IMG/VR virus record: IMGVR_UViG_3300020608_000013
Span: 62,001 to 126,000 of that record
Strand: one strand, 5' to 3'
DNA length: 64,000 nucleotides
Under the pieces are notes generated by a model. That model did not search any database. It was given only the letters and a program-made list of their open reading frames with translations, and was not told where the DNA came from. Positions within the stretch are counted from its first letter, which is position 1, and every line of letters starts with the position of its first letter. A program made the position numbers and the translations under genes. This document shows positions 29,752-35,161 of the stretch, piece by piece.

Positions 29752-30813
29752 ATGTTAAGAAAATATTTCGATAAAATAAGTGGTACACACGTTAGTACCT
29801 ACGCAAACGATGATTGGTTACGGCGTACCGTTAGTATATCATCAGCGCAAGTCCGACGATATTATATGTACTCAAACCATTATATAAAAACCGAGCATTT
29901 ACTCGTTAGGTTTTTACGTTCCCTTGACCTTCCAATTGAGAAAAGTAAAGAGGCTTATTTAAACCACGCTAAAGTACAAGGTATGCAACTGAGTAAAGTT
30001 TTCCAATTCACTTCACCGTTACAACTTGGTGTGCTCCACGATGATGTATTGTATAGTGGTAAACACCTTATCTACACTTTTAAAGGTAGTTCAAATAACC
30101 AGGTTAGTTGGTATCGACGAAAACCCATACGTTTAATCTATACGCGTGCAAACTACTTAGACTTCCCGCCTCTACACGGTATATTGCCGAGCACCATGAC
30201 AATCATATCGATTAACTTAATAGACCTTATGAGTATGTATTATGAATATAAGGTACACCGTTCTCGTTTAAACAGTCTTTACCGAAAAGTTCGACCCGAT
30301 TTACCTATTTCGGCAGGACATTTTATAAACACAATGATACTACCTTCCTTATCCGTCGATTCTTTTTTAAGTACAATAACAAACAATATTATTAAACCAA
30401 AATCGAGAGAGAAGGCAAATATACACTCTTTCACATTAAGGGAGTATACAAAAGAATTTGATGAAATTATTGAAAACTACCGACAGAATGTAGTGTTACA
30501 GGGTAGTGATTATAACACTGCTTTAGTTAACTACCCTAATTTACTCTACAAGCAACCTAATGGGTTCTTATCCTATAAACTACCCTTTAGTACCTTTAAC
30601 ACTATATCACGGCTTGTAGCTTACCTCATGCGGTTAGACCATATGTATAGTTATATCCATCTAGACCGTGAAGGATTTAAACAATCTAATGGTAGTGAAT
30701 ACTATTACCTCACTCGTTTCTCTCGTTTACTTAAACGTGATAACCAAATGAAGACCTTAGTAAGTGCCTTTAACGACACCGCTTTAGAAGAACGTTTTAA
30801 CTACTTTTTATAA
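29752..30813 (+). CDS. Conserved phiKZ gp52-like protein
   Basis: 353 aa, divergent from chmA; assigned by synteny. Confidence 0.55.
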   Translation: MLRKYFDKISGTHVSTYANDDWLRRTVSISSAQVRRYYMYSNHYIKTEHLLVRFLRSLDLPIEKSKEAYLNHAKVQGMQLSKVFQFTSPLQLGVLHDDVLYSGKHLIYTFKGSSNNQVSWYRRKPIRLIYTRANYLDFPPLHGILPSTMTIISINLIDLMSMYYEYKVHRSRLNSLYRKVRPDLPISAGHFINTMILPSLSVDSFLSTITNNIIKPKSREKANIHSFTLREYTKEFDEIIENYRQNVVLQGSDYNTALVNYPNLLYKQPNGFLSYKLPFSTFNTISRLVAYLMRLDHMYSYIHLDREGFKQSNGSEYYYLTRFSRLLKRDNQMKTLVSAFNDTALEERFNYFL

Positions 30814-30827
30814 AACGACGTAAAAAG

Positions 30828-30852
30828 CAGGGATCGCGAAACACGATCCCTG
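30828..30852 (-). terminator. Rho-independent terminator
   Basis: 9-bp stem CAGGGATCG/CGATCCCTG; AAAAAG to the left gives a U-tract on the minus strand. Confidence 0.65.
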
Positions 30853-31236
30853 AATATATGAACAACGTACAATTCCCCCATTGGCACTGTCTAAACCAGA
30901 GCTTGAGGAGTAGGACCGCAAAGTCACTACAATCTATTATATAAAATAGGTGTTGTTATTCGATAATCTAATCTAGACCTTCTCAACAACTAACATACTG
31001 GGTTATGCACAAACCTATCTAACATGATAAATCACACTTAGTGAATATTACTTATTATCTCTTTTTCTACTATACACTGGTAGTCAAACTTAGTGTAACC
31101 TAAACACTTTAACATTGTTGGATAATCTATACAGATGATTTACCATTAAACACTATTACTAAATTCATCTACACAATACCTATCCTTAGTCTATGTGTTA
31201 TTAATTCATCTTCTATCTGATTATACAAGATGGAAA

Positions 31237-31329
31237 ACTAAACTATAAATACTATCCTTTAAAACAGGGCTACCCCCCCCCCAAGTATGCTTAGTTTAGT
31301 GTTTGATGGCTCGTTCCTTCGTAACTCGT
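31237..31329. repeat. Structured poly-C element, copy 1
   Basis: ACTATCCT..AGGGCTAC10AAGT inside stem ACTAAACTA..ATACT/AGTAT..TAGTTTAGT, followed by box CTCGTTCCTTCGTAACTCGT (31310-31329). Confidence 0.8.
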
Positions 31330-31454
31330 ACAATACATTACAACACAAGGTATAAAAATACAGAGTGAAAAATAGGCAAGAAAAAAATAAGGACACAAAT
31401 AAAGTGTACTACGACATTACGCCATAGCACACTCGGTGGGTTAAGGTAACTTAC

Positions 31455-31940
31455 CTATTTACATAACGACGATCTTGTTTTTACCGAAAGTTGATAAACA
31501 TCGTCAACTAAATGGTAGGTCACGTTGAAGGTTTTAAAAACATCACCTCCAAAAGCTCTCATTAGGGCATCAACGTCTATGGGTGTACTACTCCCTATTA
31601 ACTCAGCCACATATTCAGTAGGCTCTTTAGTCTTCAGACCCACAAAATTTAAAAGGTCGTACTTGTTCACCCATCTACTAAAATACGGCTCTACCCGCAC
31701 TAACTCCTCATCCACCTTTCCTATATGGACTATCGCGTCTATACTCCCCTCATGCCATGTAATTTCAAAACGTTTAACTTCGATAGCATCGTAGCCATAG
31801 TGATTATCCAATACTTCATTTATACCATATACATCCCCTTCACCACACCCAGTGGTGACGACATCAATCAGTTCTAAGTGATCGAAATCGTATACTTCGC
31901 ACAATCCTTTACAAAGGTGGACTTTCATTGATTTAAACAT
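31455..31940 (-). CDS. Hypothetical acidic protein; the only convincing gene in the non-coding island
   Basis: 161 aa, GAG RBS and TATATTAT motif upstream. Confidence 0.7.
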   Translation of the reverse strand: MFKSMKVHLCKGLCEVYDFDHLELIDVVTTGCGEGDVYGINEVLDNHYGYDAIEVKRFEITWHEGSIDAIVHIGKVDEELVRVEPYFSRWVNKYDLLNFVGLKTKEPTEYVAELIGSSTPIDVDALMRAFGGDVFKTFNVTYHLVDDVYQLSVKTRSSLCK

Positions 31941-31987
31941 AACGCTATCTCTTAATGGTTATTGACTACTCCATTATAGTCATGTCT

Positions 31988-31995
31988 ATAATATA
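31988..31995 (-). promoter_or_regulatory. Putative early promoter motif TATATTAT
   Basis: 48 nt upstream of the ATG at 31940. Confidence 0.5.
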
Positions 31996-32421
31996 CCCGT
32001 ATACCAATCTATATTAACCACGATACTTCACTCGACAGACACAAGTAGACCACCTGTAACGCCTTAACGCTACTGATGGTTATACTACGTTCCAACAACT
32101 CACTCTACGCTATCTACAGTCCACGTTATAAGGTTTTCACAACCTAAGTGATGCCTAACCTCACTATCGTGTTATAAACCCTCTCCCTACTCAGTATACC
32201 TTTAACCTTTCTACGACGTTATTACAGTTACCTCACTTTGGTGTTATCAGACCAACCCTAATGACCCATAGGGCATAGGGATAGACATAACGGATACTGT
32301 ATACCTTATGGCTTAACGTTATCACTATGTTATACTTTACCTTAATCGTCTACCTTCGTCTTCCTATATGCACCCAAGGCACGGAAGGTATTATATATCA
32401 TCATGATTACACTATAGGTTA

Positions 32422-32518
32422 ACTATATTACGACACTATACACTATCCTCTTAAGAAGGGCTACCCCCCCCCCCAAGTCGTAATATAGTAGAAGAGGACT
32501 CGTTCCTTCGTAACTCGT
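32422..32518. repeat. Structured poly-C element, copy 2
   Basis: ACTATCCT..AGGGCTAC11AAGT inside perfect 13-bp stem ACTATATTACGAC/GTCGTAATATAGT, followed by the identical box CTCGTTCCTTCGTAACTCGT (32499-32518). Confidence 0.8.
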
Positions 32519-33239
32519 TCAACACATAAATAAAGATTGGGGTTGCTATTCGGTATGGGTAAAAAGTAGTCAACTTAAAATAGACCTCAGTAGTCATCTA
32601 CAGATGGTTAAAAAATAGGCTTAAGTAACACACCTCTGGTAGCGGTCTCACCCACCAGACTAGACTCATGTCGAGAAGGTAGTCTAGACTAACCAAGTGG
32701 TACACTAACACAATAACACAGTAAAGCTAGGTTTACCTACCAGTCTAGGCAGAAAGTCTAGAATGGGTAACAGAGTCACGCTTTGTGCTTAGGGAATATT
32801 CTCTACCAGGTTAATAAACGTGCTAATCGTTAAAGTTTCTGGCCAGTCTACTAACCCTTATATTTTTAATATTAGTTAGGTTATTTAGCCTTAGCTTACA
32901 CGCTTAGCGAAGGGGGTAGTTAATGTACCGTTATAAACCTCTCAGTGACGCTAGATTGATTTTTTAACCCTATAGGCAAGCTTACCTACTACCTAGCGTG
33001 GTGATGGGCACTATAGCCCTTTAAAACAGATTTAAGCAATCAGTGTACATACGCCATTGTCAATGACCTTTAACGAGTTTTTGGGTTAGTCACGACACTT
33101 TCTGGCCATTAGTTTCAGAGGACTACCGTAGACCTTATTCCAGCGATCGATCATTGATCAGACGATCTGGAATTAGTCCCTAACGGTGTCGTTTTTAAGG
33201 GTTTTATAGGGTGTCTAACTATTGACCATTTTAGGATAT

Positions 33240-33279
33240 ACCCTTCTATATATAATCTATAGATTATATATAGAAGGGT
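33240..33279. repeat. Perfect 40-bp palindrome with no spacer
   Basis: ACCCTTCTATATATAATCTA|TAGATTATATATAGAAGGGT equals its own reverse complement. Confidence 0.95.
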
Positions 33280-33354
33280 GGATGGAATCTGAAAAATGGT
33301 ACTTTTAGGTCGTGTTATACAAGTAGTCGCGCACGCCCGCATGGTTCCTATTTA

Positions 33355-33381
33355 GTTTATAATATCTAAGATATTATAAAC
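33355..33381. repeat. 13-1-13 palindrome flanked by GC-rich CGCG tracts
   Basis: GTTTATAATATCT-A-AGATATTATAAAC. Confidence 0.9.
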
Positions 33382-33432
33382 ATGCGCGAGCGCGTGGGCG
33401 CGAACGCGTGCGGTACTTTAGATTTTATTTCT

Positions 33433-34112
33433 AGCGATCGTGATGGTTTAATTCACCGACCTGTTAAAAAAATCAGGTGGAAGCGAAGAACATCGATCGC
33501 TCTTCAGTTCCAAGCTCAGCTCCCTTAGCGAGAGACTACACACCACCCCTGTCTTAAACCCCAGCCGCTGAAAGCTTGGGCTGGGGTTACTTCGATTCAA
33601 CCGTGGAAATTAATAATCACCACCGAGGGCCTTTTTCTAACCATCGAACCAACCCCCCGAAAATTTCAAAACCCTGAAACACAATGGTGAACGTCGTCAG
33701 GTTGAACACCATGACTCGTCCTGACTTAGGGGTCAGGACTTCGTGGCATACACAGACCTAGCCTATATCGCTCTGTAATCGATTCTAAGCCATTTTTTAC
33801 CTTGAGATGATTCATGTTAGGGGTAGGGGTAGATAAAGGCGATATGAGCTTCTGAGGGCTATAGAAAAAAGATAAACCAAACTAAACAAAACCGAAGGTT
33901 TATCACTAAAATCCCTCGAAGAGGGGATAGAGCGTCTGCAAGACAAAAGTATTATAACCCCGCGACCCCAGGCGAAAAAAAGCGCTGCGAGCGAAACTGG
34001 AGAAAACTGAAAGGTAGATTGTGCGCTATATGGGCGTGAGATCGCCATACAGACGTTTTAGGGGGCTAGCCTATGTTTTGGTATAGGTGGGTGTTATAAA
34101 GTGGCTTAAAAT
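33433..34112. ncRNA. Candidate structured non-coding RNA or ssDNA-structured origin segment
   Basis: Stems at 33433-33501, 33557-33588, 33684-33712, 33718-33739, 33871-33904 and 33911-33928, plus long-range pairing 33782-33796/34098-34112; no credible ORF. Confidence 0.4.
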
Positions 34113-34148
34113 GCATTCTACGGTATTTTAGCATTTTGAGTAATGTAG

Positions 34149-34168
34149 TGATAATTGATCAATTATCA
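34149..34168. promoter_or_regulatory. Perfect 20-bp palindrome, operator-like
   Basis: TGATAATTGATCAATTATCA, about 105 nt upstream of the 34275 gene. Confidence 0.6.
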
Positions 34169-34274
34169 TTCACTATTAAACGACAAATCACTTTGAAAAA
34201 TTTTAATGGTGTTGTGCTGTAGTACAAGATCGGTGTTTTGATAAATTGTTAAAAACAAAGGAGTTATTAAGGAA

Positions 34275-35108
34275 ATGGATACGATTAACGGTGTTATAAA
34301 TGCCATCAAGCATCAGATACCTCGGGCGATTCTAGAAGAAACGTTTAATGAACCTGATGCTGGGTTGTTACGCAGTATCGATGATGGAATTTACCGCAAT
34401 GTGATACTAGGTCGAGTCGTTCTAGATTGTAACCTAATCGGAGGTGAAGAGGCTTTAATTTACATAAGTCAAAGCCAAGCCGAACGGGTTAATGACATGG
34501 TGTCGCTTTATGATATACCTGATAGTGCGACACAAAACAGAGAGGTTATATCGCCACTTAGCGTGACTTATGCGACCTCATTAATGTCTAACGCAGGGTC
34601 TAGTCTTTCGATGGGTAGGGCACGGCACATGGGCGCTTCTCAATCGTCTGGTGGATGTAGTCAGAGTGAGCTTTTAAAGCAAGCTAAGAGTATGTTAGAC
34701 ACGATGAAACCATTACCCGTACTTTCCCACACTAACCTGAAAATGACCGCACGTAACGTACTAAGAGTGACGGATAGTAGTGGTATTTTTGGTGATTTCA
34801 TTCTTCGTTGTATCTTGGGTAATTCAGCGAATATGGAGAACCTCCAACCCTACTCTCGATTAAATTTCAACGAGCTTTGTGTACTGGCTTGTAAGGCGTA
34901 TTGTCATAACGAACTTGTCATTAAGCTGAATAAACAAAAAATTGCGTATGGGCAAGGTCTAGGGGTTATAAAGGATATTGTCGATGAGTATAGTGAGGCG
35001 AATGAACTTTACTTAGATTATCTGAAGAATGTGTGGACGACCGTTGCTTTTTGCAATGACCGCGATACCTACCGTAGATTTATCTCGTTGCAAATACCTA
35101 ATTTTTAA
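34275..35108 (+). CDS. Conserved phiKZ-like core protein
   Basis: 277 aa, AAGGA RBS; N-terminal AIKHQIPRAILEETF resembles a phiKZ-group core family as recalled. Confidence 0.6.
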   Translation: MDTINGVINAIKHQIPRAILEETFNEPDAGLLRSIDDGIYRNVILGRVVLDCNLIGGEEALIYISQSQAERVNDMVSLYDIPDSATQNREVISPLSVTYATSLMSNAGSSLSMGRARHMGASQSSGGCSQSELLKQAKSMLDTMKPLPVLSHTNLKMTARNVLRVTDSSGIFGDFILRCILGNSANMENLQPYSRLNFNELCVLACKAYCHNELVIKLNKQKIAYGQGLGVIKDIVDEYSEANELYLDYLKNVWTTVAFCNDRDTYRRFISLQIPNF

Positions 35109-35125: not shown

Positions 35126-35161
35126 CTACTACCAAGATGGGATAACCCATCTTGGTAGTAG
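35126..35161. terminator. Bidirectional terminator hairpin
   Basis: 16-bp perfect stem CTACTACCAAGATGGG/CCCATCTTGGTAGTAG between convergent genes. Confidence 0.85.

What the first reader, a model, noticed from the sequence alone, without database searches (positions are those of the whole stretch)
33240..33279. Perfect 40-bp spacerless palindrome
ACCCTTCTATATATAATCTA|TAGATTATATATAGAAGGGT is exact, which is very unlikely by chance and normally unstable, and this phage encodes an SbcD-like nuclease of the family that cleaves hairpins. Palindromes of this size are the established targets of protelomerases (N15, PY54, phiKO2) and can extrude AT-rich cruciforms at origins. No protelomerase is visible in the window, so it may instead be a cruciform origin or a terminase or resolution site.
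Basis: partly seen in the sequence, partly recalled or inferred. Interest (0 to 1): 0.65.

Follow-up and report, generated by a model that had tools for sequence, protein, structure and literature searches.

The report
Conserved perfect palindrome at candidate phage origin
The 40-bp perfect palindrome is real and is kept perfectly symmetric in related phages; it is not a hairpin-telomere site, and it most likely is an easily melted, cruciform-capable element in the main replication-origin region of a distant phiKZ-like jumbo phage.

Summary
The palindrome at window 33240-33279 is exact and far beyond chance. It is present in independent assemblies. In ~93-99% identical relatives it is a perfect 44-mer: both arms carry one extra TA, while the flanks differ right up to its edges.

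The telomere idea fails. The whole 212-kb genome has no protelomerase or tyrosine-recombinase domain, and contigs join two different flanks.

The palindrome is not unique. The genome holds seven spacerless perfect palindromes of 26-42 bp and about 48 perfect inverted repeats, nearly all intergenic. A 31%-identity relative has 14 spacerless ones.

This one sits in the genome's largest ORF-free stretch (about 2.3 kb). That gap is exactly where third-codon GC skew flips sign for genes on both strands, the largest rise of any gene boundary (permutation p about 0.001). The distant relative shows the same flip at its own hairpin-bearing gap. The palindrome core and a second palindrome 100 bp away rank 4th and 6th among the least stable 30-bp duplexes genome-wide.

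Best reading (about 0.4): an unwinding or cruciform element of a bidirectional origin. Main rival (about 0.3): an RNA hairpin in a non-coding transcript. No raw reads or RNA data were available.

The parts
33240..33279 (.). P1: exact 40-bp spacerless palindrome. Outer 7-bp G+C-containing clamps surround a 26-bp core that is 24/26 A/T and contains (TA)4 in each arm.
   Evidence: As single-stranded DNA it folds as a hairpin at -14.8 kcal/mol, z = -7.4. It is the 4th least stable 30-bp duplex in the genome. In relatives it is a perfect 44-mer with (TA)5 in both arms.
33330..33412 (.). P2: compound hairpin. G+C-rich outer stems enclose an A/T-rich palindrome at 33355-33381 (13-nt arms, 1-nt spacer). 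Each arm of that palindrome carries the early-promoter core ATATTATA, pointing outwards.
   Evidence: z = -3.6 on + and -4.5 on -. It is the 6th least stable 30-bp duplex in the genome. The inner palindrome and outer stems are unchanged in the relative, which lacks a 14-nt side branch. It scores below 14 on the full promoter matrix.
31941..34274 (.). Largest ORF-free stretch of the genome, lying between a 161-aa gene (-) and the DUF7484 gene (+). The small ORFs 33151-33342(-), 33382-33528(+) and 33812-34048(-) are not kept in frame in relatives.
   Evidence: Indels of 4 nt, 14 nt and 1 nt fall in the relative. Rfam has nothing above chance.
32500..33800 (.). Plateau at the minimum of cumulative G-C. 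It is the centre of the strand-independent GC-skew polarity switch, and P1 lies in its middle.
   Evidence: (corrected, detrended minimum at window 33801).
31237..31390 (.). Poly-C element, copy A. A variable stem surrounds a conserved loop with a C10 run, followed by a conserved 20-nt box. The second full copy is at genome 211805-211958, close to a weaker second skew rise.
32422..32527 (.). Poly-C element, partial copy C. Its 13-bp perfect stem has a different sequence from copies A and B, which is covariation. It marks the border between DNA about 99% identical to the relative and highly divergent DNA.
31987..31994 (-). Core of a canonical early (virion-RNAP type) promoter serving the 161-aa gene. 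It bounds the non-coding region on the left.
   Evidence: matrix score 38.5. The architecture TATATTAT-N6-G matches AR9 and phiKZ early promoters (PMC5312081).

Best explanation
P1 is a cis-acting DNA element of the phage's principal replication-origin region. It is an A/T-rich, clamp-flanked perfect palindrome that melts, and probably extrudes as a cruciform, more readily than almost any other segment of the genome. Together with the neighbouring promoter-like palindrome P2, it marks the place from which forks move outwards in both directions.

Shown:
- The palindrome is real.
- It stays perfectly symmetric in relatives through a mirrored TA indel, while its flanks diverge.
- It lies in the largest non-coding gap.
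- That gap is the sharpest strand-independent GC3-skew switch in the genome.
- A distant relative has the same kind of switch at its own hairpin-bearing gap.
- P1 and P2 are extreme minima of duplex stability.

Inferred:
- The skew switch reflects a bidirectional origin.
- P1 is the unwinding or structure element of that origin, not a bystander.
- Initiation may use a transcript from P2 (T7/T4-style promoter plus downstream A/T-rich region) or a structure-specific nick.
- The symmetry is kept either by selection on pairing or by arm-to-arm templated correction.
For: (1) Strand-independent polarity switch. GC3 skew read on the + strand goes from -0.165 to +0.069 for + genes (p = 8e-4) and from -0.103 to +0.169 for - genes (p = 3e-11) across genome position about 95 kb. 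Per-gene values flip between the last gene on the left and the first on the right.

(2) Among all gene boundaries of the circular genome, the largest minus-to-plus rise (0.279, 12 genes per side) is exactly the gap 93940-96275, which equals window 31940-34275. The permutation 99.9% quantile is 0.281. None of 10000 gene-order shuffles reached the observed range of the corrected cumulative skew. Its minimum is at window 33801, and the raw G-C plateau spans 32500-33800.

(3) Replication of the pattern. The 206-kb relative G001 shows an abrupt switch of the same sign across its 448-bp non-coding gap, which holds two hairpins (p = 5e-6 and 7e-7). phiKZ shows no such structure.

(4) P1 and P2 rank 4th and 6th among the least stable non-overlapping 30-bp windows of 212 kb, and they lie 105 bp apart.

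(5) Conservation. P1 has 0 substitutions inside a block that is about 10% divergent. The one change, a TA indel, is present in both arms in ERR15087779. Contig end-points in two more runs fit the same 44-mer. A nearby 20-bp palindrome is broken asymmetrically in the relative, so symmetry is not kept automatically.

(6) P1 has no U-tract on either side and no canonical promoter directly upstream, so it fits neither transcript-hairpin class of this genome.

(7) The family B DNA polymerase and ribonucleotide reductase genes lie 2-9 kb to the right.
Against: - There is no functional data, no raw reads and no RNA runs.
- A skew switch can also arise at an old inversion breakpoint or a mosaic junction, and this region is mosaic.
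- The skew pattern is not a simple two-arm V. Beyond about 50-60 kb on each side it fades, and there is a weaker second rise near 210-211 kb.
- Six other long perfect palindromes sit in ordinary intercistronic positions with no skew switch. A long perfect palindrome in this phage therefore does not in itself mean an origin.
- No iterons or initiator gene were identified.
- phiKZ-like phages are generally thought to rely heavily on recombination-dependent replication (my own knowledge), which would blur origin signals.
- The flanking genes of the two switch gaps are not homologous.
Confidence: 0.4

Rival explanations
1. P1 acts at the RNA level, like most of the about 48 perfect inverted repeats in this genome. 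It would be a long stem-loop in a non-coding transcript, for example one started leftwards from the promoter-like core in P2 about 75 nt upstream. It would work as a non-canonical terminator or insulator, an RNase III-type processing site, or a stabiliser.
For: Nearly all long perfect inverted repeats are intergenic. Many follow the early-promoter motif directly, as 5' stem-loops; the 30-bp spacerless palindrome at genome 170567 is one of these. Others carry U-tracts and look like terminators. The distant relative has 24 such repeats with a 0-1 nt spacer, mostly between convergent genes. The phiKZ terminator motif is itself a short perfect palindrome. Long stem terminators and 5'UTR-derived sRNAs are documented in 201phi2-1 and phiKZ (PMC11512511). 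The ATATTATA core in P2 points towards P1.
Against: P1 has no U-tract on either strand. No full-matrix early promoter lies upstream: P2 scores below 14, and AR9 vRNAP is reported to be very sensitive to single deviations. P1 sits in a divergent-gene gap where no terminator is needed. Self-complementarity through the loop, and an exactly mirrored indel, are not required for an RNA hairpin. By my estimate from the spacer-4 and spacer-6 counts, about 1 spacerless case would be expected by chance, against 7 observed.
Confidence: 0.3
2. P1 is a recombination or break hot-spot rather than a classical origin. It extrudes as a hairpin on the lagging strand or as a cruciform, and is cut by the phage Mre11/SbcD-like and Rad50/SbcC-like nuclease or by a RuvC-like resolvase. 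The resulting ends seed recombination-dependent replication, or concatemer processing and packaging.
For: An SbcD-like Metallophos protein is in the window. There are sub-threshold Rad50/SMC-like and RuvC-like frames elsewhere in the genome. The region is mosaic, with a sharp change in divergence. Forks primed from a fixed break would also produce a skew switch (inference).
Against: The other six long palindromes would be cut too, yet they show no skew switch. No termini or fold-back data exist. The terminase gene is 13 kb away.
Confidence: 0.12
3. P1 has no function of its own. It is a by-product of a palindrome-perfecting mutational process, such as template switching in quasi-palindromes or slippage in the TA run. 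The process operates throughout this phage clade, and P1 happens to lie in dispensable spacer DNA.
For: Loop-less perfect palindromes are enriched genome-wide and clade-wide, with unrelated sequences. The mirrored TA change is what arm-to-arm templated correction would give. The surrounding DNA evolves fast.
Against: P1 has zero substitutions in a block that is about 10% divergent, in at least two separate studies' samples. It coincides with the skew switch and with the extreme stability minimum. The nearby 20-bp palindrome decays asymmetrically.
Confidence: 0.13
4. P1 is a protelomerase (TelN/TelK/ResT-type) telomere-resolution site of a linear hairpin-ended replicon.
For: Only its size and perfect symmetry. 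A mirrored indel is what hairpin-telomere replication would produce.
Against: There is no PF16684 or PF00589 match at E <= 1 in six-frame searches of the whole genome. The phage is phiKZ-like and lytic in type. P1 joins two different flanks in k=141-class contigs from two samples. Six further palindromes have unrelated sequence.
Confidence: 0.02

Closest known systems
Palindromic origins of herpes simplex virus 1 (oriL, 144-bp perfect palindrome; oriS, about 45-bp) - from my own knowledge, not tested here
   Same: A perfect or near-perfect palindrome centred on an A/T-rich core, lying in a non-coding gap between divergently oriented genes next to replication genes, and notoriously unstable when cloned.
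   Different: The HSV origins are defined by UL9 initiator boxes in the arms. No initiator or binding boxes were identified here. The virus, host domain and replication proteins are unrelated, so this is an analogy and not homology.
Promoter-dependent phage origins: the T7 primary origin (promoters 1.1A/1.1B plus a downstream A/T-rich region) and T4 oriF/oriG (promoter plus a downstream unwinding element, R-loop primed) - from my own knowledge
   Same: A promoter-like element (the ATATTATA core in P2) with an extremely A/T-rich, low-stability segment (P1) about 75-115 nt downstream. The phage encodes its own RNA polymerases.
   Different: P2 is only a core match and fails the full early-promoter matrix. 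The unwinding elements of T7 and T4 are not perfect palindromes. No transcript data exist here.
Intergenic stem-loops of phiKZ-like phages (terminator motifs and 5'UTR hairpins/sRNAs; PMC11512511; phiKZ motif seen)
   Same: They belong to the same phage group and have the same intergenic placement. The phiKZ terminator motif is itself a spacerless palindrome with 9-10 nt arms. Early promoters have the same TATATTAT-N6-G design.
   Different: The palindromes here are 26-42 bp with unrelated sequences. P1 has neither a U-tract nor an adjacent canonical promoter. phiKZ has none with arms longer than 10 nt.
telRL/telO protelomerase targets of N15, PY54 and phiKO2
   Same: The length class (about 40-56 bp) and the perfect dyad symmetry.
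   Different: There is no protelomerase or any tyrosine recombinase in the genome. No plasmid-prophage biology is apparent. The palindrome is A/T-rich, and it is one of seven.

Membership tests
Protelomerase telomere-resolution site (telRL type) | A protelomerase gene (ResT/TelK catalytic domain) in the same replicon, usually adjacent to the site | tested here: not met
   PF16684 gave no match at E <= 1 in the 212-kb genome, six frames. PF00589 also gave none.
Protelomerase telomere-resolution site (telRL type) | Molecules with covalently closed hairpin ends (fold-back L-L' and R-R' reads) | not testable with these tools
   Only Logan contigs (k=31) were served, and these cannot tell L-R from L-L'. 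JGI contigs from two samples join L to R.
Intrinsic (factor-independent) terminator | A stable stem-loop followed at once by a U-tract on the transcribed strand | tested here: not met
   The stem is present, but neither flank is T-rich. The terminator scan of 30800-34300 does not list P1.
phiKZ-type early-promoter 5' stem-loop | The hairpin begins at the start site, 6 nt after a full TATATTAT-N6-G promoter with its upstream A/T boxes | tested here: not met
   Twenty matrix hits score >= 18 (24 hits in all at the >= 14 cut), and none adjoins P1. The nearest core-only match (in P2) is about 75 nt away and scores below 14.
Replication origin defined by compositional polarity | A strand-independent switch of GC skew from negative to positive | tested here: met
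   The same pattern appears in relative G001.
Replication origin defined by compositional polarity | A non-coding region containing an A/T-rich, low-stability unwinding element | tested here: met
   It is the largest ORF-free gap. P1 and P2 are the 4th and 6th least stable 30-bp windows genome-wide.
Replication origin defined by compositional polarity | Initiator-binding repeats (iterons) and a cognate initiator gene | tested here: inconclusive
   There is no convincing iteron family in 30800-34300, only loose AGGGT-type boxes. The flanking 161-aa and 171-aa proteins have no family or fold match.
Replication origin defined by compositional polarity | Demonstrated initiation: marker-frequency peak, 2D gels, autonomous replication | not testable with these tools
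   No raw reads, infected-cell data or isolate are available.

The most novel reading that the evidence does not exclude
The P1/P2 gap is the first sequence-defined bidirectional replication origin in a phiKZ-related jumbo-phage lineage (one with multisubunit RNA polymerases). Initiation would depend on a cruciform-capable perfect palindrome whose symmetry is actively regenerated arm-to-arm, possibly by structure-specific cleavage that seeds replication. The poly-C stem-loop elements found at both skew rises would be part of the same origin machinery. Loop-less perfect palindromes would be a clade-specific solution for intergenic signals.
Probability: 0.25. Interest if true: 0.75.

Novelty: new variant of a known kind. 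Interest (0 to 1): 0.55.

Why it matters
Replication origins of phiKZ-like and other giant phages are essentially undefined. A recent genome paper reports that origin prediction for such phages has low reliability (PMC12390700), and two genome-wide transposon studies of these phages that I checked describe no origin.

This study found a sharp, strand-independent GC3-skew switch that lands on a hairpin-bearing non-coding gap in two distant members of one environmental lineage. That gives a concrete, testable origin candidate and a simple way to look for others.

The mirrored TA indel is also a clean natural example of a long palindrome being kept perfect while its flanks drift. That bears on how phages tolerate, or exploit, sequences that cellular SbcCD-type nucleases attack.

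If the RNA-hairpin rival is right instead, the finding is ordinary regulatory punctuation.

Tried and rejected
- **Similar DNA in phages.** blastn of the non-coding region against 50,697 phage records gave no match.
- **Rfam.** Nothing at gathering thresholds for the whole window or at E <= 5 for the region; the only hits were chance miRNA-like hairpin matches on P1. No tRNAs were found.
- **Relatives.** IMG/VR and JGI scans with the DUF7484 protein and with RNR found only one distant relative, at 31% identity. The word-index protein search found one 97% relative and one 34% relative. The 161-aa ORF has no relatives beyond its own cluster.
- **Other palindromes in relatives.** The 30-bp and 26-bp palindromes and the 35-bp hairpin are identical in the relative's contigs, so they say nothing about mirrored change.
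- **Sigma-70 promoters.** The scan found fewer sites than in shuffles and none at P1.
- **Flanking proteins.** Atlas look-ups of the 161-aa and 171-aa proteins returned low-confidence models and no usable hits.
- **Synteny of the switch gaps.** The genes flanking the G000 and G001 gaps are not homologous.
- **Cyanobacterial HIP1 lead.** GCGATCGC occurs only 3 times against 1 expected, so this was dropped.
- **Direct terminal repeat.** The 141-bp end repeat that IMG/VR classes as a direct terminal repeat is an exact assembly overlap, indicating a circular or permuted assembly. There is no doubling of depth between the poly-C copies, so they do not bound a terminal repeat.
- **Assembly mis-join at the palindrome.** Rejected. 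A mis-join would give an L-L' fold-back and not a non-redundant 212-kb circle, and the relative shows a skew switch without a long palindrome.
- **Extended stem outside P1.** The pairing between 33225-33232 and 33291-33299 is not kept in the relative.

Full report
**1. The observation.**
Window 33240-33279 is an exact spacerless 40-bp palindrome. Its outer 7 bp contain most of the G/C. The inner 26 bp are 24/26 A/T and hold a (TA)4 run in each arm. In 20 first-order Markov simulations of the genome the longest spacerless arm was 8-10 nt.

It is not an artefact:
- Contigs from two JGI metagenomes carry it identically.
- In k=31 Logan contigs of the source run, the left contig stops 10 nt past the centre and the right contig starts 10 nt before it. 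A 40-nt unitig equals the palindrome, and all three have equal depth. This is what a real palindrome longer than k gives.

**2. What the genome is.**
The window is bases 62001-126000 of a 212,020-bp contig whose ends overlap by exactly 141 bp, so the assembly is circular or permuted. The source environments are biofilm, hot-spring and vent metagenomes.

The genome encodes:
- split RNA-polymerase beta-type subunits
- a divergent family B DNA polymerase
- a class II ribonucleotide reductase
- a DUF7484 protein
- a phiKZ gp29-like protein
- an SbcD/Mre11-like phosphoesterase

The best matches to cultured phages are phiKZ-like jumbo phages at no more than 38% protein identity. The SbcD-like gene is a core gene of that group; phiKZ gp65 is annotated the same way.

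**3. The telomere idea.**
Six-frame searches of the whole genome found no ResT/TelK catalytic domain and no tyrosine recombinase at E <= 1. The palindrome joins two different flanks. I consider a protelomerase site excluded for practical purposes.

**4. The palindrome is one of a family.**
- The genome has seven spacerless perfect palindromes of 42, 40, 36, 32, 30, 28 and 26 bp, with unrelated sequences.
- It has about 48 perfect inverted repeats with arms of at least 12 nt and spacers of 0-12 nt, almost all intergenic.
- From the numbers with 4- and 6-nt spacers I expect about one fully palindromic case by chance. Seven are seen, and they include the longest stems (my calculation).
- A 206-kb relative (G001; DUF7484 31% identical; GC 30%) has 51 such repeats. 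Fourteen have no spacer and ten have a 1-nt spacer, mostly between convergent genes.
- phiKZ has none with arms longer than 10 nt, although its terminator motif is itself a short perfect palindrome.

**5. Transcription signals.**
An intergenic motif is strongly enriched. Twenty sites score at least 18 on the position matrix, 24 sites in all pass the cut of 14, and 23 of those 24 are on the - strand. The strong sites lie 55-70 nt upstream of start codons.

Its consensus has an A/T-rich upstream box followed by TATATTAT, six bases and a conserved G. This is the architecture of the virion-RNAP early promoters of AR9 and phiKZ (PMC5312081; PMC11512511).

Many inverted repeats start at that G and so form 5' stem-loops; the 30-bp spacerless palindrome is one of these. 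About 15 others have U-tracts and look like terminators. None of the spacerless ones has a U-tract. P1 has neither a U-tract nor an adjacent full promoter.

**6. The local setting.**
P1 lies in the largest ORF-free stretch of the genome, window 31941-34274. The small ORFs there are broken by 4-, 14- and 1-nt indels in the relative, so they are not genes.

About 100 bp to the right is P2. Its G+C-rich outer stems enclose a 27-bp A/T palindrome, and each arm of that palindrome carries the promoter core ATATTATA pointing outwards. P2 fails the full promoter matrix.

**7. Relatives.**
Logan contigs of ERR15087779 cover both sides (L008, L003). There the element is a perfect 44-mer, with (TA)5 in both arms, and the bases directly outside both edges differ.

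In two further runs, one from another study, the left arm carries the same insertion. The contig end-points, 13 aligned plus 2 clipped bases past the centre, fit a perfect 44-mer (inference).

The surrounding block is about 10% divergent, and 32550-33100 is far more divergent. Zero substitutions in 40 bp is therefore unlikely to be neutral. A 20-bp palindrome at 34149-34168 is broken asymmetrically in the same relative.

**8. Polarity switch.**
- After removing the coding-strand term, the detrended cumulative GC skew has its global minimum at window 33801. Raw G-C is flat from 32500 to 33800, between a C-rich left side and a G-rich right side.
- Third-codon GC skew read on the + strand changes sign for genes on both strands: + genes go from -0.165 to +0.069, and - genes from -0.103 to +0.169 (p = 8e-4 and 3e-11). 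A transcription or coding bias would move the two strands in opposite directions.
- A change-point scan over all boundaries of the circle puts the largest rise (0.279) exactly at the gap 93940-96275. The permutation 99.9% quantile is 0.281.
- G001 shows the same kind of abrupt switch across its 448-bp hairpin-bearing gap (p = 5e-6 and 7e-7). phiKZ does not.
- The arms fade after 50-60 kb, and a weaker rise lies near 210-211 kb.

**9. Duplex stability.**
With nearest-neighbour energies, the P1 core and P2 are the 4th and 6th least stable non-overlapping 30-bp windows in 212 kb, and the two least stable in the non-coding gap.

**10. Interpretation.**
The region-level evidence is what a bidirectional origin gives. 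Within it, P1 is the most conspicuous conserved, symmetric and easily melted element. I therefore rank 'origin unwinding/cruciform element' first, at about 0.4.

The ranked alternatives are:
- an RNA-level hairpin like its many siblings (about 0.3)
- a break or recombination hot-spot (about 0.12)
- a functionless product of palindrome-perfecting mutation (about 0.13)
- a telomere site (about 0.02)

The mirrored indel can come from selection on pairing or from arm-to-arm templated correction. I cannot separate these.

An old inversion breakpoint could mimic the skew switch. The repeat of the pattern in a relative with non-homologous flanking genes makes an origin the simpler reading, but it does not prove it.

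**11. Limits.**
No raw reads and no RNA runs were available. Only one close and one distant lineage could be compared. Origins of giant phages are poorly defined in the literature I could search (PMC12390700), so there is no reference model to test membership against.

Noticed in passing
window 31237-31390, window 32422-32527, and genome 211805-211958 (L025:6805-6958): A three-copy element. A stem whose sequence differs between copies (covariation) encloses a conserved loop with a C9-C11 run, followed by a conserved 20-nt box. Assemblies break at it. The partial copy marks the border between DNA 99% identical to the relative and highly divergent DNA. The distant full copy lies about 1 kb from the second-largest skew rise.
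   Followed up: partly
whole genome: An early-promoter class with consensus A/T-rich box ... TATATTAT-N6-G. Twenty sites score >= 18 on the matrix, and 23 of the 24 sites at >= 14 are on the - strand. The strong sites lie 55-70 nt before start codons and are typically followed at once by a perfect stem-loop at the transcript 5' end.
   Followed up: yes
G001 = IMGVR_UViG_3300026484_000087, 82542-82989 (L016:2542-2989): The distant relative has an abrupt strand-independent GC3-skew switch at a 448-bp non-coding gap with two hairpins. It also has 24 perfect inverted repeats with a 0-1 nt spacer, mostly between convergent genes.
   Followed up: partly
window 35126-35161: A 16-bp-stem hairpin between the convergent DUF7484 and 171-aa genes. 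In the Logan contig of the source run its 4-nt loop appears as the reverse complement (differences at 35142 and 35145). This is either a k=31 graph ambiguity or real loop flip-flop.
   Followed up: no
whole genome: GGATCC is absent (0 against about 28 expected), which suggests avoidance of a BamHI-type restriction site. CGATCG is about 2.3-fold over-represented, with three copies in the non-coding gap.
   Followed up: no
window 33429-33750: A G+C-rich (about 46%) stretch of conserved hairpins, for example the 8-bp G+C stem at 33559-33586 and 33718-33741. The segment 33500-33650 is nearly identical in the relative, and one G-C to G-T change fits a + strand RNA stem. This may be a structured non-coding RNA.
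   Followed up: partly
genome 158932-184659 (L023, L024): Five of the seven spacerless palindromes cluster in 26 kb (12% of the genome). This lies within the region dense in early promoters and at the plateau of the cumulative skew.
   Followed up: no
genome 10465-10704(-) and 2283-2417(+) (L038, L039): Sub-threshold RuvC-like (20.7 bits) and SMC/Rad50-like N-terminal (21.5 bits, 828-aa frame) matches. These are candidate resolvase and SbcC-like partners of the SbcD-like protein.
   Followed up: no
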